Below, piece after piece: positions 1-57,669 of a DNA stretch of 64,000 nt. The number at the start of each line of letters is the position of its first letter. The stretch's first letter is position 1. The notes beneath the pieces were generated by a model. That model ran no database searches. It was not told the DNA's origin and saw only the letters and a list, made by a program, of their open reading frames with translations. Both the position numbers and the translations under genes were made by a program. The stretch covers positions 1,736,001 through 1,800,000 of the forward strand of contig NC_043010.1 in assembly GCF_006345805.1 (NCBI RefSeq). The letters are read 5' to 3'. This DNA is from Octopus sinensis (lineage: Eukaryota).

Positions 1-744
1 TGAGACTATCGAACCGTCGTCTCATGGTAAGATGATATATATTTTATACAAAAGTTCCAAAATATAGATTCAATAATTTTGCTTAAGACGTCTCCAACGC
101 AGGATACCCTCGTGACAACAAACAATTCGTTTCCATTTTTAACACAAAAAAAGTTAACGAAAAACAGAAAAGATTCCATTACATGCATAATGATATGAAA
201 TTCACTTATTGGTATCATGTTCTTGGCATCAATTAAGGCTTAAAGAAGAATGGATTTATTTACAGAAAGACAGAATTCTATAATTCTGCTGTTAGCCATT
301 AAAACTGCTAGAACTTTTTAATAGAGACGAACTGTTGTTTTATAACAGAAAAGAAATTATCAAAGAGTATTTTGAGATGAAGCATTGTGGGATATTAAGA
401 TAGTAAAACACTTATTAGGGCCGAAACAGTGGAAAATAAAATAGATATGTGAAAACAGAACAATGGTTGAAGTGTTACCTTGTAGTTTTTCAATATTCAA
501 GTGTTAGAACTAGTTAATCAGGATAGACATAGAGAAATGGGAAATGGAATAAAACGGTTAATGTGAGAGAGGCTCGTGACATGCGCAGACTGGTGTTGTT
601 ATAATGGTCAGTTTGCTTCGTGTAGTTCTTGTTAGTTGTTTAGTGCTGGTTTCAGCTTGTTAATTATCATAGCATCCTTGATGCTTTTAAATATAATATA
701 GAGCTTGTTTACTATTATCCTGTTGTTAGCCTATACTCTTTTAC

Positions 745-984
745 TTGTTTCAGTAATTTGACTGCGGCCATGCTGGAGCATCGCCTTTAGACGAGCAAAT
801 CGACCCCGGGACTTATTCTTTGTAAGCCCAGTACTTATTCTATCGGTCTCTTTTGCCGAACCGCTAAGTGACGGGGATGTAAACACACCAGCATCGGTTG
901 TCAAGCAATGCTAGAGGGACAAACACAGACACATAACATACACACACACACACACAAACACACCACATAATAATATATATACAT

Positions 985-1038
<54 letters not shown>

Positions 1039-1140
1039 TACGACAGGCTTCTTTCAGTTTCCGTCTACCAAATCCACTCACAAGGCTTTGGTCGGCCCGA
1101 GGCTATAGCAGAAGACACTTGCCAACATGCCACGCAGTTG
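745..1140 (-). mobile_element. tRNA-derived SINE family A (internal (TA)n), 5'-truncated
   Basis: Reverse complement of the family consensus seen at 15611-15955 and 61898-62287. Confidence 0.85.
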
Positions 1141-1343
1141 AAATTGCATTGTAGACGCAGGCATGGTTGAGTAGTTAAGAAGCTCGTTTTGCAGTCACGT
1201 GATTCCAGGTTCAGTCCCACTGCGCGGTACCTTGCGCAAGTGTCTTCTACAACAGACCCGGGCCGACCAATTCCTAGTAAAAACTTTTATAAACAGAAAC
1301 TGTTTTGAAGCCTGTCGTGTGTGTATATATATATATATATATA

Positions 1344-1553
1344 ATTACTCCAAACATGAACAAAGAGAAAACACAACAACGCGAGGACGTAAAACAAGTA
1401 TAGTGTTATTGGACGCCCAGGAAGGAAAGAAAGAAGGAGGATTTAACGTTTCGAGCGGAGCTCTTCGTCAGAAACATAGAAAAAAGAAAGATCCAAGGAA
1501 GGGAAGACGGAGAAAGAAAATCGCCAACGATACACACGCGGTCACATATTGAA
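1344..1553 (-). mobile_element. About 200-bp Penelope-like/retrozyme-like element carrying a hammerhead (family 1 copy 1), inside a (TA)n tract
   Basis: Clear homology to 17668-17865 and 54358-54535 (CAACGCGAG(G/A)ACGT...GACGC(T/C)CAGG...ACGTTTCGAGCGGAGCTCTTCGTC); (TA)n on both sides. Confidence 0.7.
1441..1475 (-). ncRNA. Minimal type I hammerhead ribozyme motif, canonical CUGA core (family 1, copy 1)
   Basis: GUUU-CUGACGA-A-GAGC(UCC)GCUC-GAA-ACGU-U^AAAU: stem I GUUU/AAAU, stem II GAGC/GCUC, palindromic ACGU in place of stem III. Confidence 0.65.
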
Positions 1554-1625
<72 letters not shown>

Positions 1626-1638
1626 TATATATATACGC

Positions 1639-1685
<47 letters not shown>

Positions 1686-1716
1686 GTATATATATGTATA
1701 TGTATATATATATACG

Positions 1717-1758
<42 letters not shown>

Positions 1759-2087
1759 TATACGAGTGTGCGTTTGATTTTTTGTGTTAGACCTCACCAT
1801 CACTTGATAACCGATACTGGTTTGTTTTCATTAACATATGTAACATACCAATTCGGCAAAGGAGATCGACAGAATAAGTACTAGACTGAAAGAAGGAATA
1901 GCAGCTAAATCTTTCTCCAATCCCATTGCAGACGTCATAATGAAGGACAAATTGAATAGTGTAGGCTTAGATACACTATCCAACGTGTCACTATCCAAGA
2001 GATAGATGAAAAACCATGATTACAGGCCTCCTTGATCAGGGCTGACCTGGGGTTAAACAGCACATGAAAATGCAGGCTAAACAGGAA

Positions 2088-2234
2088 GTACCATGCGCAA
2101 ACTGCGGCCTGCAGCACTTTCTGAATGACACGCATAACGAAAAATTATCTTGAATTATTTTTAGTTTTGCGGCCCGCCTGATGATAATCCATATCTCATG
2201 TGGCCCACTTTTTGGCAATGTTTGCGCATGCCTG
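2088..2234. mobile_element. Degenerate hAT-type MITE
   Basis: CCATGCGCAAACTGCGGCC at the left end, GTTTGCGCATGCCTG at the right end; internal GCGGCCCGC and TGTGGCCC. Confidence 0.55.
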
Positions 2235-2459: not shown

Positions 2460-3075
2460 TTGGATTTAAATTTTGACACAAGGCCAGCAATTCCGGTGGA
2501 TGGGGTAAGTCGATTACATCGACCCAAGTGCTAAATTGGTACTTATTTTATCGACTCCGAAAGGATGAAGAGCAAAGTTGACCTCAACGGAAATTGAACA
2601 CAGAATGTAAAGACGGACGAAATGCCGTTTAGCATTTAGCCCGGGGTGCTAATGATTCTGATTTCTTCTATCAATATCATATACAAACATTAGGCGGTGA
2701 GTTGGCAGAATCGTTGACACGACGGGCAAAATGCTTAGCGGCATTTCGTCCGTCTTTACGTTCAAATTCCGCCGATGTCGGCTTTGCCTTTCATCCTTTC
2801 TGTTCAATAAAATAAGTATCAGTTGAACACAGGTGTCGCTGTAATCGACTTACTCCCTTTCCCAGAGTTACTGGCTTTGTGCCAAAATTTGGAAACAGTA
2901 TCATAAACACGTCGGACAAAATGCTTAGCGGCATTAATTTCGACTTATTACGTTCTGATTTCAAATTCCGCCATTGCCAACTTTGTTTCATCTCTTCGGG
3001 GGTCGATAAAATAAAATACCAGTAAAGTACTAGGGATGAATGTAATCGAAATTGCTGGCTTTGCGCCAAAATTAC
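2460..3075. mobile_element. Cluster of diverged SINE family B copies in both orientations
   Basis: Minus copy at about 2460-2660; plus copies at about 2695-2900 and 2910-3075, all with the TTCATCCTTTCGGGGTCGATAAA-like core. Confidence 0.75.
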
Positions 3076-5890: not shown

Positions 5891-6247
5891 CATCTAGAGA
5901 TTATCATGGGAAAATAACAAGGACATGTTTACGAAAACGAGTATTATGAATCTTTGTTTTGGAATAAAGGTTCTCGAAACAATTCACATACAGCTATAAA
6001 CAACTGCATGTAAATAATGGGTAGAAAAATCCTTTTTCGGTAGAAAAAAGTCGATGGTTTCGACTTTTCTATCCAAAAACGTTTTTTAAATCCAATATTT
6101 ATATGCTATTCTTTATAGCTATATGTGATGCGCTTCGAGAACCATTTTTTCCATCTCACACACGCTAAAAAAAAAATTGAATTATTTAGCTTTTTCTCGA
6201 AAGTTTATACATTTCTTATAATTATTATTATCATTATTATTATTATC

Positions 6248-6256
6248 ACTTACCTG
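6248..6256 (-). other. 5' splice donor ending the protocadherin exon (phase 0)
   Basis: Minus strand reads CAG|GTAAGT (perfect consensus), followed at once by an (AAT)n tract; the ORF read-through beyond it is low-complexity (SDNNNNDNNN). Confidence 0.85.
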
Positions 6257-8653
6257 TGCTGCCACCTGCATGGTATTTGGTAATTGTGTTCCTGGAGGAG
6301 GTATTTTCCAGCTTTGTCCAGATTTTTTTACTAACTGTGGATCTTGTCGCAGCAATGTACTTTGTGAACTTCTGTTGTGCTCCTGTTCCGATACAACAGT
6401 CACTGGCACATCATATTGTGGCACCACTTGCCCGCAAATATATTCTGACAGATTATTTTGACTAAATAGTTTAGAACCATCAACTCCGCTAGTATACTGG
6501 TTATTTCTGAGATTGTTTCTTCGAACAATACACACAGTTATTGATATAACTACTACCAAAGCTACTATTACTGTTGCTACTAACATAATAATCAGTAAAT
6601 TGATGTGAATTTTATCATCAGACTGTTTGTGAACTGCAGTAAACATCTTTGATGTTTTGTTGCTTACTGTAAGGGTTAAAGAAAGGGTGCTGGTTGCTGA
6701 TAAAACCGGCGCACCGCTGTCTTTGACTACAAACTGGAGGTTATACGATCCTGCATCGTTTTGATAGACTGGACGGGAGAAAGACAAAACTCCTGTGTAA
6801 AGGTTCACAGTAAATAATTGTTTGTCATTTCCTCCAAGTATTTCATATTGGAGGAAAGCATTGACATGACTGTCTCTATCAGAGGCTCTTAGCGCCGTAA
6901 TGTCATTCTTACCCTGTGGATGATAATGGACATCTAGATTGAAAGGATCCACGCTGGGGAATGTAAAATAGGGTGCGTTGTCGTTTTTATCAATGACTTC
7001 AACCACAACATTTGCTGTGTTGTTCAACGAAGGAGTTCCGTTGTCTTTGACTAAAACTTTAAATTTATAAACGTCTTGTTGCTCCCTGTCCAGTGACTGA
7101 GTGGTGGAGATGAAACCAAAATTAGATATTTCAAACGGAAGAAGATAGCCTTGGTTGTTCAACAAAGAATATGTCAGTTCACTGCCAGAATCAAGGTCTG
7201 GATCTGTGGCATTTATAAAACCAATGGGAAAATTAGGTTCTTCATTTTCGAAAATTAAAAATTTAAATGTATCCTTGGTAAACTGTGGATGTACGTCGTT
7301 GACATCCATTACTTGGATGGAAAAATTCTTAGTTGTTCGCAAAGGAGGAGTCCCGTTGTCTTGGCATGTAATCGTAAAATGTAGAAAATTATCAATTTCT
7401 CGATCAATGTGGCTTTTTATGACAATTTTATATTTCATCTTTCCTAGACTTTGAAGTTGGAGTTTATCGTGCTCGAGTTCACAACTCACTTCTCCATTCT
7501 GACCAATATCATTGTCTGTAACCTTGACATAAGCAATAAAGCTGTTAACTTTGACCCCTTCAAAAATGGAGGCTACATCATTGGTAGTAAGAGAAATGAA
7601 GTTGATATCTATATCAGGAGCATTGTTTTGTTGGTTGATGACATTCACAAGTACTATAGCTGTTGAACTGAGTGGCGGTATACCCTCGTCGCGGGCCTCA
7701 ATCAACAGCTTGTAACTTTTCTTAGGTTCTGTGAAGAACTTTTGATGTAAAAAAAGTTCTCCTGATGTTTTATTCAGCTCAAAATAAGATATGTCCAGAG
7801 CTGATGACTTGGTGCTGAAATAATACGATATTCGTCCATTTTTCCCGGAATCCAAGTCTTTTGCCGACAGTATAACTACAGGTATATATATCAAGTGGCC
7901 GTTGTTTACTGTAATGTTATAGATATTCTGGCTAAAAACTGGTCTGTTATCGTTGATATCGGCGACTGATATAGAAACATCTAATACGCAGGGCAGCCCA
8001 CCATCATTGGCTACCACTTGTACATGATAAGAATCTTTAAGCTCTCTATCTAGTTTCTCTTCCAAAACGATTCCGAGTTCAGTAGAACCATCGTGTTTCC
8101 TAGAAACAGACAATGTAAATGGCTCCGACATTTCCTTTCTCAGCCGATATTTCAACTGAGAATTCAGGATACCAACATCTCTGTCAATGGCATTTGGAAT
8201 AAATTTCGTCGTTCCCTTCATATCACTTTCTGAAAATTCCAAATGAAATTCTTTACTCTGAAAGTCTGGTCTGTTATCGTTAACATCTTTTATAATAATT
8301 TTAATTTCTAAAATCTTCACAAACGATTCCCTATTTCTCACAGCCACTTCGACCATCCTGAAACATTCGGTGTTGTATTTACAAAGGGACTCAGCATCTA
8401 ATACCTGAGCGGTATAAAGTTTCCCACTTTTGGAAATATTAAATAATTTTGAGCTGCTCTCATTTCCTTTCTGGAGCTGTTGAAACCAAAACAAACTGTG
8501 ATCCTTCAAAGGAACACCATTCACTAAATGTGTGTCGGCTGCAATATCACCAATATAGCTCCCGGGGTTCTGACCTTCTTCTACATAATATGTCAAATCT
8601 ATGCATAAAGATGCCTGTAGCAAAAGGAGAAATGCATAGATTTTTATCAGCAT
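6254..8653 (-). CDS. pcdh: Protocadherin, large coding exon (signal peptide, EC1-EC6, TM, partial cytoplasmic tail); gene continues past a splice donor
   Basis: ATG at 8653 (AAGAAGATGC; in-frame TAA upstream) gives MLIKIYAFLLLLQASLC signal peptide. Cadherin motifs DVNDNRP, LDRE, DINDNRP, AKDLD, DVNDVHP, ATDPD, LDRE, DKNDNAP, ASDRD. Cys-X5-Cys (CKYNTEC, 8363-8383) in EC1. TM INLLIIMLVATVIVALVVVISITVCIV at about 6527-6607. Ends at CAG|GTAAGT; 2400 nt = 800 codons. Family-level name only. Confidence 0.97.
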
Positions 8654-8657
8654 CTTC

Positions 8658-8723
8658 TTATCCGGAAGTAATGTCACAAAAACATTGACATAAATTCCAA
8701 CACGACTGTTTTAGATTTCGCAT
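8658..8723 (-). promoter_or_regulatory. Upstream ORF (MRNLKQSCWNLCQCFCDITSG*) in the putative protocadherin 5'UTR; second uORF MSMFL* at 8691-8674
   Basis: Direct translation; TAA ends 4 nt before the main ATG. Depends on the 8735 acceptor being used. Confidence 0.5.
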
Positions 8724-17667: not shown

Positions 17668-17865
17668 TATATATAAAGTTAATCCAAACAAGAAAACACA
17701 GAAAAAAAGAGAAAAAAACACAGCAACGCGAGAACGTGGAACAATTAAAGTATTATTGACGCTCAGGAAAGAAGGGAAGGAGGGTTTAACGTTTCGAGCG
17801 GAGCTCTTCGTCGGAAACAAGGAGAAGGAAAGATCCTAAGAAGAGAAGACAGAGGAAAAAATATT
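17668..17865 (-). mobile_element. Penelope-like/retrozyme-like element, family 1 copy 2
   Basis: Homology to 1344-1553; begins after a short (TA)n with GTTAATCCAAACAAGAAAAC. Confidence 0.7.
17784..17818 (-). ncRNA. Hammerhead-like motif, family 1 copy 2 (CCGACGA core variant)
   Basis: GUUU-CCGACGA-A-GAGC(UCC)GCUC-GAA-ACGU-U^AAAC; U4 replaced by C. Confidence 0.5.
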
Positions 17866-18282
17866 TAAGCTGGTGGTGCTCAAGAGATCACAAAATCAGA
17901 AAAGGAGAGAACCTCAGGTTAACAAACACATCGATTGGATCACATTTATAGTTTTTTTTTAATACAAAACATGACAAAACAAATAGATTTGTTACGTCAC
18001 CTATTAGTTATGTCATGATTTGTATTAAAAAATAAGCTATAAATGTGGTCCAATTGATGGGTTTGTAAATCTGAAGTTCTCTCCATTTTCTGAATATTAG
18101 TGTTTGTTTCTTGATAAACCCTTGTTTACCCTGTTGCTACTTGCACCCTACGAGCATGGTAGTGTGCCTGCACCCCAATGCCCGGGGATAATACGAGTAA
18201 CAGATACCGATAGTACATACTGATATTTTAGCCCTTAACCGGTTTATAACTGCTAACTCTTTCTCTCTCTCTCTTTCTCTCC

Positions 18283-32603: not shown

Positions 32604-32699
32604 AAGATGGGACTGTAATTTGAAAGAGATTTGGCTGCTGTTTCTAGTAGATCAAACGCCTGCATAGAAATGTTATCATTAGTTCGTGTTGTTTTTGTC

Positions 32700-33270
32700 G
32701 TTGGTTATTGTAACGATGGTAACTGTGGTGGTGTCATGGCAGGGATGTAGGTGGTGGTGGTGGTGAGTATCGTAGTGGTGGCTATGGTTGCAGTTCTTGT
32801 AGTGGCTGTGGTTGCAACTTTGTGCAGTGACGGTGATAATAATGATGATAATGGTGGTAGTGGTGGTGGCGGCGGCATTGGCAGTGGTGGTGATGGGGGT
32901 AATGGTAGAGGTTATGGTGGTAGTGCTAATAGTAGTAGTGGTAATTGAAGCATTCTGGTGGTAGTTGTAGTTGAGTTGATGGTGGCGATAGTGATGCTGA
33001 TGCTGGTGGTGGTGGTGGTGGTGGTGCTGGTGGTGGTGGTGGTGGTGGTGCTGGTGATGGTGGTGGTGGTGGTCATGGTGGTCATGGTGATGATATTTGT
33101 TGTCCAAGGTGGTAGTGATAGAGATAGTGGTGGCGGCGATGGTGGTGGTGGTGGTTGTGATGATGATGATGATGATATTGTTATTAGTGGTGGTGGTGGT
33201 GGTGGGGTGGTGGTGGTGGTGGTGGTGATGGTGGTGTTGGTGATGATGAATTTGATGATTGTGGTGGTGG
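32700..33270. repeat. Degenerate (GGT)n/(GAT)n trinucleotide region
   Basis: Direct reading. Confidence 0.85.
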
Positions 33271-33679
33271 CGGAGGCGACGACTGTGGGCTGAATGTTGT
33301 AGTGTAAAAGCAGAGTGGAAGGAATGCAAGAAGAGAAACCATAGCAAAGAAATGAATTGATAATGGACTGCAAAGAAGAAGAAGACCTTGGAATGGCGGA
33401 GCAACTGTCTCAGCTTGTTTGGGTAATATTTCAACAACTAAGAATGATAATAAATGGAAGAAATACGAAAAAGACAAAGAAAAAAAAAGACAGGAAAACG
33501 AAACGAAACAAAATAGGTGAGTGAACAGGGAAGGAGGAGGAGGAAAGAAGGGGAGGATAGAGGAGTATTGGGGGGAAGGTGAGAGTGTGAGGGACTTTAT
33601 GTTCCTTTTATAGAAAGGAGAGGAAGTCATTGAAAATAGTGAGTGTAATAAGCAGAAATATGAAGATTGTTGAACTAGA

Positions 33680-33693
33680 GTCAGTTCATGTGT

Positions 33694-33725
<32 letters not shown>

Positions 33726-34640
33726 AGGTCTGTGTGTGTGTGTGTGTGTGTGTGTATAGGTTATGGTTGTATGTGTGTGTATGTACATGTGTAGTTCTGT
33801 GTATGTGGCTGTATGAGTGTATGCGTGTATGCAATTGTGTGTGTGTGTGTGTAGGTCTGTGTGTACATAGGTGTGTGGCTGTGTATGTGCGTATGCGTGT
33901 GTGTAGGTCTGTGTGTACGTGTGTAGGTTTATATGTACATAGGTGTGTGACTGTGTATGTGCATGTGTAGGTCTGTGTTGCTGCATGAGTGTATGTGCGT
34001 ATATGATTATGTGTGTGTAGGTCTGTGTGTACATAGGTTGTGGCTCTATGTGTGTATATGTGTGCGCGTGTGCAGGTATGTGTGTACATGTGTGGCTGTA
34101 TGTGTTTATGTGCGTATGATAGTGTGTGTGTGTAGGTCTGTATGTGTGCATGTGTAGGTCTATGTATACATAGGTGTGTGGCTGTATATGTGCGTATGTG
34201 TATGTGCATGTGTAGGTCTGTCTGTACATGTGTGTGGCTGTATGTGTGTATGTGTGTGTATGTGTGTGTGTGTAGGTCTGTGTGAGCATAGGTGTGTGGG
34301 TGTATATATGTGTATGTGCGTATGTGCGTATGTGAGTGTGTGTGTTTGTGTGCGTATGTAGGTCTGTGAGTACATATGTGTATGGCTATATATATGTGTG
34401 TGTGTGTGCATGTGAGTATGTGATTGTGAGGGGTATAGGTCTATATGTACGTATGTGTATAGTTGTATGTATGTGGCTGTATGTGTGTATAGGTGTATGC
34501 TTTCGTATATGTGTAAGCATATATGTATGTATACATTCATGTGGATGTGTCTGTGTGTTTATATGTATGTATGTATATGTGAATAAGTCTCTGTTTCTCC
34601 GAACATGCGTATGCGTGTAATCGTATTTGCATATATGTGT
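33680..34640. repeat. TG-rich compound minisatellite (recurrent GTGTAGGTCTGTGTG..ACATAGGTGTGTGGCTGT)
   Basis: The motifs TAGGTCT and TGGCTGT recur many times within (TG)n. Confidence 0.85.
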
Positions 34641-41190: not shown

Positions 41191-42724
41191 CATATATATA
41201 CATATATATATGCATATATATATGCATGTATATATATATGCATATATATATGTATGTATATATATATATGCATATATATATGTATGTGTATAATTATATA
41301 TGTATATATGTATATATATGTATATATATATATATGTATATAGATATATATATATATGTGTATATATATATATATATTATATACATATATATATTATATA
41401 TATATATATATGCATATATATATATATATAATATATATGTATATATAGTATATATATATATATTATATAATATATATATATAATATATATATATATATGC
41501 ATATATATATTATATATGTATATATATATGTATATATATGTATATATATATATATAATATATATATATATATAATATATATATAATATATATATATATAT
41601 AATATATGTATATATATATGTATATATATATATATACATATATATATATGCATATATATATGCATGTATATATATATATATATGTGTGTATATATATGCA
41701 TATATATATATATTCTATATGCATATATGTATACTACACACACACACATGCACACAAGCACACACACACACGCCTACATACACACCCACATACACATATA
41801 TACATGCCGCATGCAATATGCTCACTCGCGGGCATATATCCAGTAACGTGTCTTCCACATGACATTCCCTCGCGGGAAAGAAAGAATAAATATAGATCGA
41901 AAATAGAAAAACATATAATTAAAATATATTTCAGTGAAATGAACTAATTTCCTTTCTTCTAAATTAGAATATTTCTGAACAAAAGTTCATGAACAAATAA
42001 ACAAATAATAGATTTTCAAAATGATAAGAAAACGAAATTTTTCTCTTTCTGTTTTTGTTTATTTGTTGATTACTTTGTTTTGTTCTTGCTGACATATTTG
42101 TCTAGGTTTTTTATTGCTGTTTTTTTTTCTTTCAATATTTGCGTTCGATAATCTTATTGTTGTTGTTGTTGTTTGCATCTATAGATACATCTCTGTACAC
42201 ACACAGACACACACACATATATATATATATATACATTTACATATATATATAAATACATGTACATATATGCCTATACATATATATACATAAACATATACAT
42301 GTATACATATATGTATGCATATAATATATATATATATGTACATATATACATATATATACGTACATATATACATATATATATATATTATATATATATATAT
42401 ATACGTGACATATATACATACATATATACATATATGTACACACATATATATATGCATATATATGTACATATATATACATGTATATATACACATATGCATA
42501 CATATATATATATATATGTACATATATATATATACACACACACATATATATATACATATATATATATACATACATATATATACATATGCACATATATATA
42601 TATACACACACACATATATATATATACATATATATATATATACATATATATATATACATATACACATATATATATACACATATACATACATTTATATGTA
42701 CATGTATATATACATACATATATA

Positions 42725-42957
42725 TACATTATTTACATTTGACGCATATTTATCCTCATTTTTTTTGTTGTTAACACAATGTTTCAGCTGATATACCCTC
42801 CAGCCTTCATCAGGTGTCTTGGGGAAATTTCTAACCTGGGTTCTCATTCCTAAGGTATTTTTCGATGTTCCTCTTCTTATTAATACTATCATTCATGTCA
42901 CTGCCTGGAATCGAACTCGGTATCTTGGGGCTAGTAGCCCACGCTCTTAACCACTTC
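42725..42957 (-). mobile_element. tRNA-headed SINE-like element ending in a hammerhead motif
   Basis: Minus strand: A-box-like GTGGTTAAGA (42954-42945), B-box-like GAGTTCGATTCC (42918-42907), short AT-rich spacer, hammerhead (42818-42773), then a (TA/CA)n tract. Confidence 0.65.
42773..42818 (-). ncRNA. Minimal type I hammerhead ribozyme motif, family 2
   Basis: GACAC-CUGAUGA-A-GGCUG(GAGGGUAUAU)CAGCU-GAA-ACAU-U^GUGUU: 5-bp stem I, 5-bp stem II, canonical core; ACAU probably a CpG-decayed ACGU. Confidence 0.7.
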
Positions 42958-43612: not shown

Positions 43613-43858
43613 TGCGCTCTTTTAAAGCCTAACCAGACTCATGGGCCCGGTTTCCCGGATTCAATGGCGTATGTGTTCCCCAGCTGGACGGGACTCCAGT
43701 CCATCGCAGCGTTACTCCTTTTTGCCAGCTGAGTGGACTGGAGCAATGTGAAATGAAGTGTTTTGCTCAAGAACACAACGCGTCGCCCGGTCCAGGAATC
43801 GAAACCACAACCTTACGATCATGGTGCTGACTCCCTAACCACTAAGCCACGCGCCACC
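43613..43858 (-). mobile_element. tRNA-derived SINE family C; other copies 22198-22400(+), 47365-47598(-)
   Basis: Head GGCGCGTGGCTTAGTGGTTAGGG...GGTTTCGATTCC; body TTGAGCAAAACACTTCATTTCAC and TGCGATGGACTGG.GTCCCGTCCAG (V-SINE-like by resemblance). Confidence 0.8.
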
Positions 43859-43923
43859 ACTCATTTGACACTAAATCATGCTAAAAACAAAAAACAAAAT
43901 ACCTCTCTCCCTCTCACCATTCT

Positions 43924-43968
<45 letters not shown>

Positions 43969-45596
43969 CTTCCGCTCTTTTCTGTGGAGGACAAAAACAC
44001 TTTTCTGGAGCCAAGTTTTCATTGATGATATATCAACTTGTCTCTTTTTCTTTTTATTTCTCTCTTCTCTCCTTCCCACCTGCGCAACATTCTCTCTACG
44101 TTATTTCTCTCTCTTTGCTTATCCCTCTTTATTACTGCGTCTTCCCTCTCACTACCGCCCGTTTCTTGCTCTTTTACATTCGCTCTGTTCTCCCCCCACC
44201 ACCACCCAACACTCTCGCTTTACCTTTGCCTGTCTTCATTGTCCCCTTCGCCTCCTACCACACACACCAGTTCACTGTCCTGTTACTTTCTCTTTTTGTT
44301 ACAATTTCTCATCCCCGCCACCAATTCTCCCGCACTTACTCTCTATCTTCCTCTCTCTCAACCACTTTTCTCCGCTCCCACCAACACAAATCCCCCCCCC
44401 CACAGCTTTTCTCTGCCTTTCTTCCCTTCTTCACCGGCACCACACTCTCTTCCTAAATAAAACGTTAACAAATTTAAACTTAAACCTCCTTTTTCAAGGT
44501 AAGTTTATGTCTCTTTCTGCTGTAATTTTTTTCTTTTTCTGTGAATGTAATTTTGTAGTTGAGATATGCTGTTCGAACAAGTCAGTCACATTCCGTTTTT
44601 TGTACAGTTCGATGCCTTTCCCCCCACCCCCTTGTGTAATGTAAATTCTTCAACTGTGAAAGAACAACCAGTTATGTTTTCTAGTTTGTCTGGTTGAGCC
44701 AAATAGGCAGCCAAACAGTCTCGTGTGCATGTATTCCTCACGAATGCACAAGTGTGATTCCCATATCAATATTCGAACCTTTGACCTCTGGGCATTCAGC
44801 TTGATATGTTAACAATTCTTCCAAATGTTATTCTATTCGGGAAATTGAAGTAAATAAATAAACATGAATAAAAGACAGTATAAGCGAAGTTAACTAAACA
44901 TACTTCACGTCTTGTAGAAGTTTCTTGTGTAAAGGTTTCTCGGCGCAGATATGGCTCCGTGGTTAAATTCATTCAGGACAAACCAACTCGTAGTTTCGCG
45001 TTCACTCCCACCTAAAGGCACTTTAAGGCAAGTGCATTTTATTATAAACTCTGGTCGACCGAGGATTTGTGAGTAAAATTTAGTAGCCAGAAACTGTGTG
45101 GAAGTTCGAAGGGTAGTTTTCTGTTTTGTGGTAATAAACCTAATCCGTTACTTAGATTAAATACCATACACACGTGGCCCATAGTATCCTGTGGAAACCC
45201 TTTATTGCAAAATTTGGGACCAGGTTTGTGGTCTGCGAATAATTCCTACCCCCCCCCCTGACCAATGTCAGAGGCCGTGCAAAGTTTATTGGCGTCGCCC
45301 GCTATCTACTGTAAAATTCCTGCATTTAATAAGAAGAAAACATGGATTCTATCGCTTCGAAGGAGCTAAATTTAAGCTACAAAAATAGCAATGGTGGTCC
45401 TGAAATGTCAATGTTCCGTTTTCTGCACAGTTGACTACTTTAATATTTAGTTTAAAACAAACGTTGGAGCAAAGATATATATATATATATAATATATATA
45501 TATATAATTAATAATAATATCAAAGGGTAATCAGAAATGTCCATTACCAGTGGCCTAGCGTGTAAAAAGTTTAGTCAATAAACTATATGTTATTCA

Positions 45597-54317: not shown

Positions 54318-54357
<40 letters not shown>

Positions 54358-54359
<2 letters not shown>

Positions 54360-54535
54360 TTAATCCAAACAAGAAAACAAAAAAAAACACAACAACGCGA
54401 GGACGTGGAACAAATATAGTATTATTGGACGCTCAGGGAAAAAGGAGGGTTTAACGTTTCGAGCGGAGCTCTTCGTCGGAAACATAGAAGGGAAGACAGA
54501 GGAAAAAAATCGCCAACGGTACACACGAGGTCACA
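54358..54535 (-). mobile_element. Penelope-like/retrozyme-like element, family 1 copy 3
   Basis: Homology to the other two copies; same GTTAATCCAAACAAGAAAAC boundary after (CA)n(TA)n. Confidence 0.7.
54449..54483 (-). ncRNA. Hammerhead-like motif, family 1 copy 3 (CCGACGA core variant)
   Basis: Identical over 35 nt to copy 2. Confidence 0.5.
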
Positions 54536-54739
54536 CATACATACATACGACGGGGTTCCACATTGTTGCCAGTTAGCAAAAACAGATTCATTCACAAGGC
54601 ATTGATCAGCCTGAGGCCTATAGAAGACACCTACCCAATGTGCCTCACAGTAGGACTGAACCCAGAACTACGTGATTGCAAAGCGAGCTTCTTAATCACA
54701 CCCCCTATATGTGTGTGTGCACGCGCGCTCTTGTATGTG

Positions 54740-55923: not shown

Positions 55924-57669
55924 GTGGTTCTCGGTAAAATCTCCTCCACAGACAGAACAGACCAACTTTTTAAATCCAGGGTGTGTCAAAAATATTGATC
56001 TGCTGATAAAAACGATTTTTTTTTCTGTCTTTGCAGAATCTGAATCGTGAATAATATTTTCATATTGGAAAGTAAAGGACGGGGGAGGGGGGAGGATAAT
56101 GAGCGACAAACAACAAATGCATTAAAACACAAAGGTAAAACACAGAGAGAGAGAGAGAGAGAGAGGGGGCAGTGAGTGAGCAGGCCAGACAGAGAGAAGA
56201 GTATAGAAATGGGGAGACACATAGAGACGAGTCTATGTAAAGGGAAAGGAGGAGGTGCAGATAGACATAAGAGATGTAGATGCAGGCAGTTAGGCACACA
56301 GACAGGCACACAAAGCGGGACATAGTGAGAGAGCGACAGACATAGAGAGAGAGTGACACAGAGAGAGAGCAACAGACAGAGCGACACAGAGAGAGAGCTA
56401 AAGAGAGAGAGAGATAAAGGGAGAAAGAGAGAGAGAGAGAGCTAAAGGGAGAGAGTGTGTGTAATGTAACTCGAGTTCAGTTTTGTCTTCTTGCTGAGAC
56501 CTCACTAAAGATATTTCGTATACCAAAATTCATGTCATTAGTCCATTTCGGTTATTTCCCTTTGTTCACCATTTTGTCACAGACACAGAGAATGAGTACA
56601 AAGAAAGAAAGGAATAAAGTACGGAGAGAGAAAGAAAAGCAAAGCAAAATACAAGAGAATGAAAATGATTCGTTGCCCAAACAAGTTCGAGTCCTTGCAT
56701 CTGAGCAACGCTACTGCACAATGCACGTTGCGACTGAACGGTGCAACACCGTACAGACAACCACCACCAATGATTATAACTGGTACTCCGCGTACTCTTA
56801 ACGTAGTCCTCGAGGACATTCAGTGTGACACACAATGTGACAAGGCTGGCCCTTTCAATTACAGGTGCTATACATTTTTTGCCAGCCGAGTGGATTGGAA
56901 CTAAATGAAATAAAGTGTCTTCTTGAAGGACGCAACGCGCCGCTGGTTTTCGAACTCCCGACCTAACGATCGCGAACCGAATGCCCTAACCACTAAACCA
57001 CGCGTCAGCATTACAGCTGATACATCACTCCAATTCAGGAGTGTTTCGTTTATTAGATTTTCAAAACTTGATTCGAAACTTCTCTTCAAGGAATGGTTCT
57101 GCTTTCTGAACAATGTGATCACGCCATGGCTCATTGTTAATTGATACGGATTTCTGCGTTTTTCGTTTCTTTTCGTTTCTTTTCTTTTTTATTCTTGCAT
57201 TTTTTTTTTCATCACCCTGACACACAGACATACGCGTACAGAGAGGTATGTGTGCACGCGCACATTTGCACACGCCCACATACATGCGCGCGCTTTCCGG
57301 CACGCATAGGCGCACACATGTACACACTCCCGTGCACACACAAAGTATATATACACTAACATGCATGAATATGCATTCATACATAATATACATACGCGCA
57401 CACATATACAAACACACACATTAATACAAAAACACACACACATACAGATACACACGTAAACACAAACACATTTTGTACTAATGACTCGCTGACCTATTAA
57501 TTAATTAATTGATTTATTAATTATTCTACGACACAGTGTAAATGGGAGCTTCTGAATGGCAGTTTAACTTGCCAAAAATAGCGACCAACTCCTCACTCAA
57601 ATTCCAACTTATCGCCTTGTAAAATAAATGGCACATTAGTTAATGTAGGCCTCGATAGACTGTCTAGTG

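What the first reader, a model, noticed from the sequence alone, without database searches (positions are those of the whole stretch)
1344..1553. Canonical-core hammerhead element lying sense to the protocadherin, in its presumed downstream intron
Seen: CUGACGA-A-GAGC(UCC)GCUC-GAA-ACGU-U^AAAU on the minus strand, about 4.8 kb past the protocadherin donor, in a roughly 200-nt monomer with no Pol III head; this size and design resemble metazoan non-LTR retrozymes. Palindromic ACGU would permit dimer-assisted stem III. Inference: if transcription reads through here, slow cleavage could affect splicing, termination or recursive processing of the Pcdh pre-mRNA. Stem I is only 4 bp, so activity is uncertain.
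Basis: partly seen in the sequence, partly recalled or inferred. Interest (0 to 1): 0.72.

Follow-up and report, generated by a model that had tools for sequence, protein, structure and literature searches.

The report
Minimal hammerhead motif in octopus repeat
The flagged hammerhead-like sequence is real, but it is one copy of a 215-base mobile repeat that sits in TA microsatellites of octopus genomes, and as a lone copy without a third helix it is unlikely to cut the protocadherin transcript.

Summary
It is not a chance match: a minimal-hammerhead descriptor hits once in 748 kb of octopus DNA and never in 30 shuffles.

It is not a locus-specific element. It is the conserved centre of a ~215-nt dispersed repeat. 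The window holds 3 copies; 9 young copies and about 9 older relatives lie in 748 kb from the window, O. bimaculoides and O. vulgaris (the one O. sinensis locus had none). Eight of the 9 young copies have (TA)n/(TG)n on both sides.

Its design matches the minimal hammerheads of Penelope-like retroelements: no helix III, palindromic CG at 15.2/16.2, an extra A after A9, a G10.1-C11.1 pair and a 4-bp helix I. Helix I covaries across subfamilies. Sister lineages with dead cores (U4C, A6U) also spread, so catalysis was not needed for spread.

By orthology the flagged copy lies sense in intron 1 of a protocadherin, 4.8 kb past a GTAAGT donor. The O. bimaculoides ortholog lacks the insertion. The copy is not tandem, has no partner nearby, and its catalytic fold is strongly disfavoured. 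It is a new member of a known kind, and an effect on the host transcript is unlikely.

The parts
1334..1552 (-). Copy c1 of the ~215-nt dispersed repeat (subfamily A, canonical core); this is the flagged unit
   Evidence: nhmmer with the family profile: E 1.8e-66; aligned with 8 other young copies
1441..1475 (-). Minimal hammerhead-like module. Helix I 5' strand GUUU 1475-1472; core CUGACGA 1471-1465; extra A 1464; helix II GAGC/GCUC 1463-1460 and 1456-1453 with loop UCC 1459-1457; GAA 1452-1450; A15.1-C-G-U16.1 1449-1446; H17 = U 1445; predicted cleavage 1445|1444; helix I 3' strand AAAU 1444-1441
   Evidence: Sequence read directly; only full descriptor match in 748 kb; CM R1 score 80.6 bits
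1557..1762 (.). (TA)n microsatellite on the 5' side of the unit (element strand)
   Evidence: TRF: period 2, 104 copies
1318..1343 (.). (TA)n(CA)n tract on the 3' side of the unit
   Evidence: Sequence
17668..17897 (-). Copy c2 of the same repeat (subfamily B, core CCGACGA = U4C)
54349..54540 (-). Copy c3 of the same repeat (subfamily B, core CCGACGA), inserted in the internal microsatellite of a tRNA-derived SINE
6254..8653 (-). Protocadherin exon 1 (aa 1-800 of the O. bimaculoides ortholog P0001, 99% identical), ending in CAG followed by donor GTAAGT at 6253-6248
735..2117 (.). 1.38-kb block of nested repeats absent from the orthologous O. bimaculoides site. It holds an inverted SINE fragment, (TA)n, unit c1, (TA)n(CA)n and a full octopus tRNA-type SINE at about 735-1300

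Best explanation
The flagged sequence is an intact-core copy of a ~215-nt non-autonomous interspersed repeat of octopods. The repeat integrates into (TA)n microsatellites. Its most conserved segment is a minimal type I hammerhead module of the kind found in the terminal repeats of Penelope-like retroelements (PLEs).

Shown here:
- It belongs to a dispersed family.
- Its copies are embedded in microsatellites.
- The fit to the minimal hammerhead design exceeds chance.
- Helix I covaries between subfamilies.
- The copy lies sense in intron 1 of the host gene, by orthology.
- The insertion is absent at the orthologous site in the sister species.

Inferred:
- The ancestral element carried the canonical CUGACGA core.
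- Subfamily A, which includes this copy, keeps that core. Subfamily B (U4C) and an older family O2 (A6U) lost it yet went on amplifying. The module therefore probably served the element as a structured or protein-bound RNA segment, or as a protein-assisted, dimer-dependent ribozyme, and not as an obligatory self-cleaver.
- Mobilisation by a PLE-type reverse transcriptase/GIY-YIG endonuclease that nicks AT-rich DNA.

At this locus the copy is a solitary monomer with no helix III, a 4-bp AU-rich helix I and no partner in the intron. It is most likely catalytically silent and a neutral intronic passenger.
For: Family: 3 copies in the window. Nine young copies and about 9 older relatives lie in 748 kb covering the window, O. 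bimaculoides and O. vulgaris; the single O. sinensis locus (L004) held no copy.

Microsatellite embedding: 8 of 9 young copies have (TA)n/(TG)n on both sides.

Design: an extra nucleotide between A9 and G10.1, a G10.1-C11.1 pair, a palindromic 15.2/16.2, no helix III and a helix I of 4-5 bp are exactly the traits listed for PLE minimal hammerheads (PMC4209133).

Chance: 1 full match in 748 kb on both strands, against 0 in 30 shuffles.

Covariation: helix I pair 4 reads GC 7, CG 2, AU 1, GU 1, UA 1, UG 1, unpaired 3. The covariation score is 0.134 against 0.052 +/- 0.015, with 0 of 500 shuffles reaching it. Helix II is kept in 14-15 of 16 copies although the loops differ (UCC versus GUAG).

Core states: A = CUGACGA, B = CCGACGA, O2 = CUGUCGA, and two more distant relatives read CUGACGA and CUGAUGA. 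A canonical ancestor needs the fewest changes.

PLE biology: Neptune and Naiad PLEs prefer (TA)n targets (PMC8557442). In the anole PLE, hammerhead-dead mutants still insert, the ribozyme is protein-assisted, and targets are AT-rich (PMC11167929).

Inertness here: no tandem partner. The region's minimum free energy is -7.7 kcal/mol with z = -0.68, in a non-hammerhead fold. The hammerhead stems alone give -3.0. The swapped hammerhead dimer gives -4.1, against -15.4 for two monomers and -24.7 for the best dimer.

Not conserved: the O. bimaculoides ortholog has 140 bp of unrelated sequence in place of the 1.38-kb block.
Against: - No autonomous PLE (RT or GIY-YIG ORF) and no pLTR carrying this module was found in the 748 kb available. 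The PLE link rests on motif design and target preference only.
- Helix II is 4 bp, shorter than the 6-8 bp reported for PLE minimal hammerheads.
- The T/C difference at U4 lies in a CpG context (CCG to CTG). The canonical core of subfamily A could therefore be derived by deamination and not ancestral. Five of 6 informative sites group c1 with an O. vulgaris copy, which shows only that T is a subfamily trait.
- The sample is small (about 18 copies), and related sequences inflate covariation statistics.
- Secondary-structure energies ignore tertiary contacts and proteins. PLE hammerheads can be protein-assisted, so some cleavage cannot be excluded.
- Only a cleavage assay can show inactivity.
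Confidence: 0.68

Rival explanations
1. One reading: this is an active intronic ribozyme. Read-through transcription lets the motif cleave the protocadherin pre-mRNA, alone or as a dimer, and this influences splicing, termination or recursive processing.
For: The core is canonical and sits sense inside intron 1, by orthology. Seven of the 9 young copies lie inside annotated protocadherin gene ranges; 6 are sense and 1 antisense. The other two, c2 and c3, have no annotated host. PLE hammerheads can be protein-assisted.
Against: There is no helix III in cis and no second copy in the intron stretch held by the window. The nearest copies are 16 and 53 kb away and carry U4C. The catalytic dimer fold is disfavoured by more than 10 kcal/mol. 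PLE minimal hammerheads cleave poorly even as dimers in vitro. The insertion is missing in O. bimaculoides, whose ortholog is 99% identical in protein. Retrozyme-type elements are reported as depleted from introns in vertebrates.
Confidence: 0.04
2. It is a chance look-alike. The conserved block is a structural or protein-binding segment of a retroposon with no hammerhead ancestry. The family consensus is CCGACGA, and the canonical CUGA arose by CpG deamination.
For: Six of 9 young copies read CCGA or CCAA. CCG to CTG is the favoured mutational direction. Lineages with a non-canonical core spread well. Rfam hammerhead models give no hit. No PLE partner was found.
Against: Apart from U4, every core position fits, as do the extra A, G10.1-C11.1, GAAA, the palindromic CG, U16.1 and a non-G H17 (U, C or A in different copies). 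Helix I pair 4 covaries, GC to CG and AU. The older O2 family and two more distant relatives carry U at position 4. A full descriptor match is expected fewer than 0.03 times per 748 kb.
Confidence: 0.15
3. It is a hammerhead-bearing SINE-like retroposon moved by a LINE, in the manner of the schistosome Sm-alpha/Sj-alpha elements, and not a PLE derivative.
For: The unit is short, non-coding and dispersed with a simple-repeat 3' end. Copy c3 follows a tRNA-type SINE head directly.
Against: No tRNA-like head was found in the window by ARAGORN, and none lies upstream of the five copies whose flanks were read beyond 70 nt. The c3 head belongs to an abundant separate SINE (31 hits) whose internal microsatellite was the target. 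Both flanks are (TA)n, which points to microsatellite targeting and not to an A-rich LINE tail.
Confidence: 0.1

Closest known systems
Minimal hammerhead motifs (min-HHR) of Penelope-like elements (Cervera & de la Pena 2014, PMC4209133)
   Same: Type I topology and canonical core. No helix III or loop 3. Palindromic 15.2/16.2, so that two copies could build helix III. An unpaired nucleotide between A9 and G10.1. A G10.1-C11.1 pair. Helix I of 4-5 bp with no defined loop 1. Many variable copies per genome. AT-rich or (TA)n insertion sites, as for Neptune and Naiad PLEs (PMC8557442).
   Different: Helix II is 4 bp with a 3-nt loop, against the 6-8 bp reported. The unit is a solitary ~215-nt element, not a pLTR flanking an RT/GIY-YIG ORF. 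No autonomous partner was seen in 748 kb. Most sampled copies carry core-inactivating changes.
Metazoan non-LTR retrozymes (Cervera & de la Pena 2020, PMC7229834)
   Same: Non-coding, low-GC unit of a few hundred nt with a type I hammerhead. A possible origin from PLEs (bioRxiv 10.64898/2026.07.22.740005).
   Different: Retrozymes are head-to-tail tandem arrays, from dimers to multimers. They carry canonical hammerheads (helix I of about 6 bp, loop-loop contacts, a short helix III with a palindromic loop) and are expressed as circular RNAs. Here there is no tandem array, no helix III and no loop 1.
Dimer-dependent hammerheads of newt satellite 2 and avocado sunblotch viroid (Forster et al. 1988, cited in PMC4209133)
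   Same: Helix III is too weak in cis, so activity needs two motifs that pair through a palindrome.
   Different: Those occur in multimeric transcripts that bring two motifs together. This copy is isolated in a long intron.
Schistosome Sm-alpha/Sj-alpha SINE-like hammerhead retroposons (reviewed in PMC6765202)
   Same: A short dispersed non-autonomous retroposon carrying a hammerhead.
   Different: Those have a Pol III promoter and a complete, active hammerhead with helix III. Neither is present here.

Membership tests
Hammerhead ribozyme (catalytic core consensus) | C3-U4-G5-A6-N7-G8-A9 ... G12-A13-A14 ... A15.1/U16.1 and H17 (not G) | tested here: met
   CUGACGA 1471-1465, GAA 1452-1450, A1449/U1446, U1445. 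An extra A lies between A9 and G10.1, a variant known in natural hammerheads.
Hammerhead ribozyme (catalytic core consensus) | Three helices around the core, including a helix III closed in cis | tested here: not met
   A15.1-C-G-U16.1 are contiguous, so no hairpin is possible. Helices I (4 bp) and II (4 bp) exist. Rfam hammerhead models give no hit even at E<=10.
Hammerhead ribozyme (catalytic core consensus) | Site-specific self-cleavage | not testable with these tools
   Energetics only: the catalytic dimer fold gives -4.1 kcal/mol, against -15.4 for two monomers and -24.7 for the best dimer.
PLE-type minimal hammerhead (min-HHR) | Core without helix III, with palindromic 15.2-16.2 | tested here: met
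   The ACGU palindrome at 1449-1446. It is the only full descriptor match in 748 kb, with 0 in 30 shuffles.
PLE-type minimal hammerhead (min-HHR) | [quoted passage not shown] | tested here: met
   A1464, and G1463 paired with C1453. Both are kept in 14-16 of 16 family members.
PLE-type minimal hammerhead (min-HHR) | Short helix I (4-5 bp) and long helix II (6-8 bp) | tested here: inconclusive
   Helix I is 4 bp (5 bp in the O2 family), so that part is met. Helix II is only 4 bp, so that part is not met.
PLE-type minimal hammerhead (min-HHR) | Consensus families with covariation and compensatory changes | tested here: met
   Helix I pair 4 shows six pair types in 13 of 16 copies. Covariation exceeds all 500 shuffles. 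The sample is small and the copies are related.
PLE-type minimal hammerhead (min-HHR) | Location in the pLTR of an element encoding RT plus GIY-YIG endonuclease | tested here: not met
   No such ORF or Pfam hit in the window ORFs. No GIY-YIG-like motif or long TE ORF in the 475 kb held at that point, namely the window and loci L001-L005. A genome-wide search was not possible.
Metazoan non-LTR retrozyme | Head-to-tail tandem repeats of 150-450 bp, each with a hammerhead | tested here: not met
   TRF finds only (TA)n arrays around the unit. All 9 young copies are solitary.
Metazoan non-LTR retrozyme | Canonical type I hammerhead with loop 1/loop 2 contacts and a short capped helix III | tested here: not met
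   Helix I is open-ended, loop 2 is UCC, and there is no helix III.
Metazoan non-LTR retrozyme | Expression as linear and circular RNAs of unit length | not testable with these tools
tRNA-derived SINE | Pol III tRNA-like head at the 5' end | tested here: not met
   ARAGORN finds no tRNA in the window. No head lies upstream of four of the five copies whose flanks were read (c1, c2, L002_31133, L001_56592). The head next to c3 belongs to a separate abundant SINE.

The most novel reading that the evidence does not exclude
Subfamily A may be a still-functional, protein-assisted minimal hammerhead element. It would insert preferentially in sense within the introns of the octopus protocadherin clusters. 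Its cleavage, aided by a PLE protein or by pairing between transcripts, would shape processing of the long protocadherin pre-mRNAs and so contribute to isoform output.
Probability: 0.04. Interest if true: 0.75.

Novelty: new member of a known kind. Interest (0 to 1): 0.3.

Why it matters
Minimal hammerheads are known to be very numerous in animal genomes. My literature searches found no description of one in a cephalopod.

This family shows three things side by side: a solitary, microsatellite-targeted unit; covariation that supports the hammerhead helices; and successful lineages with dead catalytic cores. That agrees with recent evidence that hammerhead cleavage is dispensable for PLE insertion (PMC11167929).

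For the scan the practical lesson is that a canonical core in a repeat should be judged on the family, not the single copy. For octopus biology the copy itself is most likely a neutral intronic passenger in a protocadherin gene.

Tried and rejected
- Rfam on the whole window at gathering score, and on 1000-2000 at E<=10: no hammerhead. The only hits were microsatellite 'miRNA' artefacts.
- Metagenome scans for the block. The 27-mer gave 0 hits. The 19-mer gave 17 hits, all bacterial coding sequence unrelated to the repeat.
- Protein-database search with the open frame that crosses the repeat on the plus strand, hoping for spurious ORF calls that would give more copies: no hits.
- First reading, that CUGA is a private CpG-to-TpG mutation of a CCGA consensus, based on the 3 window copies. 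I revised it when more copies showed that T is shared by a subfamily and by older outgroup families. It is kept as a rival.
- The idea that the unit is the 3' body of a tRNA-SINE, from the head next to c3. Rejected because the other four copies whose upstream flanks were read lack a head.
- Alternative pairing GUUUC/GAAAC in place of helix I: no covariation support (and the O2 family).
- Search for a PLE partner: Pfam on 9 window ORFs, then a GIY-YIG regex and long ORFs in the window and loci L001-L005. This found nothing but protocadherin exons and low-complexity frames.
- The orthologous site of c2 in O. bimaculoides falls in an assembly gap, so presence or absence could not be scored.
- The paper by Lunse et al. 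on dimeric PLE hammerheads is not held in the library.

Full report
OBSERVATION

On the minus strand the window reads GUUU-CUGACGA-A-GAGC-UCC-GCUC-GAA-ACGU-U|AAAU at 1475-1441. The unit is bounded by (TA)n arrays (1557-1762 on one side, 1318-1343 on the other). TRF finds no array with a period near 200, and ARAGORN finds no tRNA-like sequence in the window. Rfam finds no hammerhead, either at gathering score over the window or at E<=10 in 1000-2000. That is expected, because there is no helix III for those models to score.

IS IT MORE THAN CHANCE?

I wrote a descriptor for the minimal hammerhead: CUGANGA, 0-1 extra nucleotide, helix II of at least 4 bp, GAAA, a palindromic 15.2/16.2, U, H, and helix I of at least 4 bp. 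In 748 kb of octopus DNA searched on both strands it matches once, at this site. It matches 0 times in 30 block shuffles. Without the helix I requirement there are 3 matches against 0.13 expected.

IT IS A DISPERSED REPEAT

The 31-nt block recurs at 17814 and 54479 with two mismatches. Alignment shows three ~215-nt copies on the same strand, 78-88% identical.

The protocadherin ORF (6182-8677, minus strand) is 99% identical to O. bimaculoides 'protocadherin beta-2 isoform X1'. The DNA, however, is only 96% identical in the exon and 84-92% identical outside it. The window therefore comes from a close relative of that assembly, not from the assembly itself.

I fetched eight protocadherin loci from O. 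bimaculoides, O. vulgaris and O. sinensis. A family profile and a covariance model find nine young copies and about nine older relatives. Eight of the nine young copies have (TA)n/(TG)n on both sides. Copy c3 sits inside the internal microsatellite of a tRNA-type SINE. No target-site duplication can be read in such flanks, as reported for microsatellite-targeting Penelope-like elements (PMC8557442).

THE MODULE AND ITS EVOLUTION

The hammerhead-like block is the best conserved part of the unit, and it is what the diverged relatives retain. The lineages differ in the core:
- Subfamily A (c1, L002_31133, L024_48975) reads CUGACGA.
- Subfamily B (c2, c3 and three O. vulgaris copies; the partial O. 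bimaculoides copy L001_56592 probably also belongs here) reads CCGACGA or its CpG-decay product CCAACGA.
- An older family, O2 (five copies), reads CUGUCGA, with loop GUAG and helix I CUUU/AAAG.
- Two still more distant relatives read CUGACGA and CUGAUGA.

Five of six informative sites group c1 with an O. vulgaris copy. The T at position 4 is therefore a subfamily trait, not a private mutation.

Over A, B and O2, a canonical ancestor needs two changes and either alternative needs three. The opposite polarity (CCG to CTG by deamination) remains possible and is kept as a rival.

Helix I pair 4 shows GC 7, CG 2, AU 1, GU 1, UA 1, UG 1 and 3 unpaired. Helix II is kept in 14-15 of 16 copies despite different loops. 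The covariation score is 0.134 against 0.052 +/- 0.015, with 0 of 500 shuffles reaching it. Slid controls give 16-45% of cells paired against 85% for the real structure. The competing pairing GUUUC/GAAAC has no such support. The sample is small and the copies are related, so this is supportive evidence, not proof.

COMPARISON WITH KNOWN CLASSES

Cervera and de la Pena (PMC4209133) define minimal hammerheads in the terminal repeats of Penelope-like elements by these traits:
- no helix III;
- a palindromic 15.2-16.2;
- a conserved G10.1-C11.1 pair;
- a helix I of 4-5 bp;
- a long helix II;
- high variability within a genome;
- very low activity in vitro, and only as dimers or trimers.

The octopus module meets all of these that sequence can test except helix II length, which is 4 bp. 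Neptune and Naiad PLEs prefer (TA)n targets. In the anole PLE, hammerhead-dead mutants still insert, the ribozyme is protein-assisted, and targets are AT-rich (PMC11167929). This fits the finding that the U4C and A6U lineages kept spreading.

Retrozymes, by contrast, are tandem repeats with canonical type I hammerheads and circular RNA products (PMC7229834). The tandem and canonical-helix criteria fail here.

I found no RT or GIY-YIG ORF in the window ORFs or in the window and loci L001-L005. The PLE link is therefore inferred from design and target preference.

THE HOST GENE

Exon 1 ends CAG|GTAAGT at 6254/6253. In O. bimaculoides the orthologous gene continues after a 17-kb intron to exons 2 and 3. 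The window holds only 6.25 kb beyond the donor, so the unit lies sense inside intron 1 if the gene structure is shared.

The orthologous O. bimaculoides site has 140 bp of unrelated sequence where the window has the 1.38-kb block 735-2117. That block comprises an inverted SINE fragment, (TA)n, the unit, and a full SINE. The insertion is therefore lineage-specific, although the encoded protein is 99% identical.

LIKELY ACTIVITY AT THIS LOCUS

- The 71-nt region has a minimum free energy of -7.7 kcal/mol (z = -0.68), in a fold that pairs UGACG with CGUUA and buries the core.
- The hammerhead stems I and II alone give -3.0 kcal/mol.
- The strand-swapped dimer that would create helix III gives -4.1 kcal/mol. 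Two separately folded monomers give -15.4, and a non-catalytic duplex gives -24.7.
- The covariance model finds no other copy in the intron stretch. The other two window copies are 16 and 53 kb away and carry U4C.

Cleavage of the protocadherin pre-mRNA is therefore unlikely, though only an assay can exclude it.

VERDICT

It misses two points. This is one copy of a microsatellite-targeted dispersed repeat with a PLE-type minimal hammerhead, not a retrozyme. A role in host RNA processing also has no support. It is a new member of a known kind, of modest interest.

Noticed in passing
window 1-64000 vs L001: The window is not the O. bimaculoides reference. The protocadherin exon is 96% identical in DNA (99% in protein) and the flanks are 84-92% identical, so it comes from a close relative or a very divergent haplotype.
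   Followed up: partly
window ~735-1300 (minus) and ~1800-2110: A full copy of the abundant octopus tRNA-derived SINE, with an internal (TA)n(TG)n tract, lies directly 3' of the unit. An inverted SINE fragment lies 5' of it. The SINE head has 31 matches in 250 kb.
   Followed up: partly
window 17896-18093 (and L001 2633-2845): A ~200-bp stretch just upstream of copy c2 is its own reverse complement at about 83% identity. It is conserved in O. bimaculoides. Its nature is unknown.
   Followed up: no
L023 84172-84400 and 84866-85012 (both minus strand): A subfamily B copy and an older O2 copy lie about 470 bp apart on the same strand in O. vulgaris. Two hammerhead-like modules would be in one transcript. 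Both cores are inactivated.
   Followed up: no
window c1-c3; L001, L002, L023, L024 copies: Eight of 9 young copies share the orientation of the protocadherin gene of their locus. Of the 7 inside annotated gene ranges, 6 are sense and 1 antisense, which is not significant (two-sided p about 0.13).
   Followed up: partly
L001 ~2860-3000 and ~56540-56585: Assembly gaps (runs of N) in the O. bimaculoides assembly abut (TA)n tracts at or next to copies of this repeat. Copy counts from that assembly are therefore probably underestimates.
   Followed up: no
L001 45790-45854 (plus strand): A diverged relative with core CUGAUGA-A lies about 700 bp downstream of exon 3 of the O. bimaculoides ortholog. 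Its helix II is imperfect and it has no palindrome.
   Followed up: no
window 32679-34440, 42179-42791, 43757-44644: The long 'ORFs' listed mechanically here have no Pfam match. Those whose translations I read (33187-34440) are translated microsatellite or low-complexity sequence (TH/HT repeats), so these are probably not genes.
   Followed up: partly
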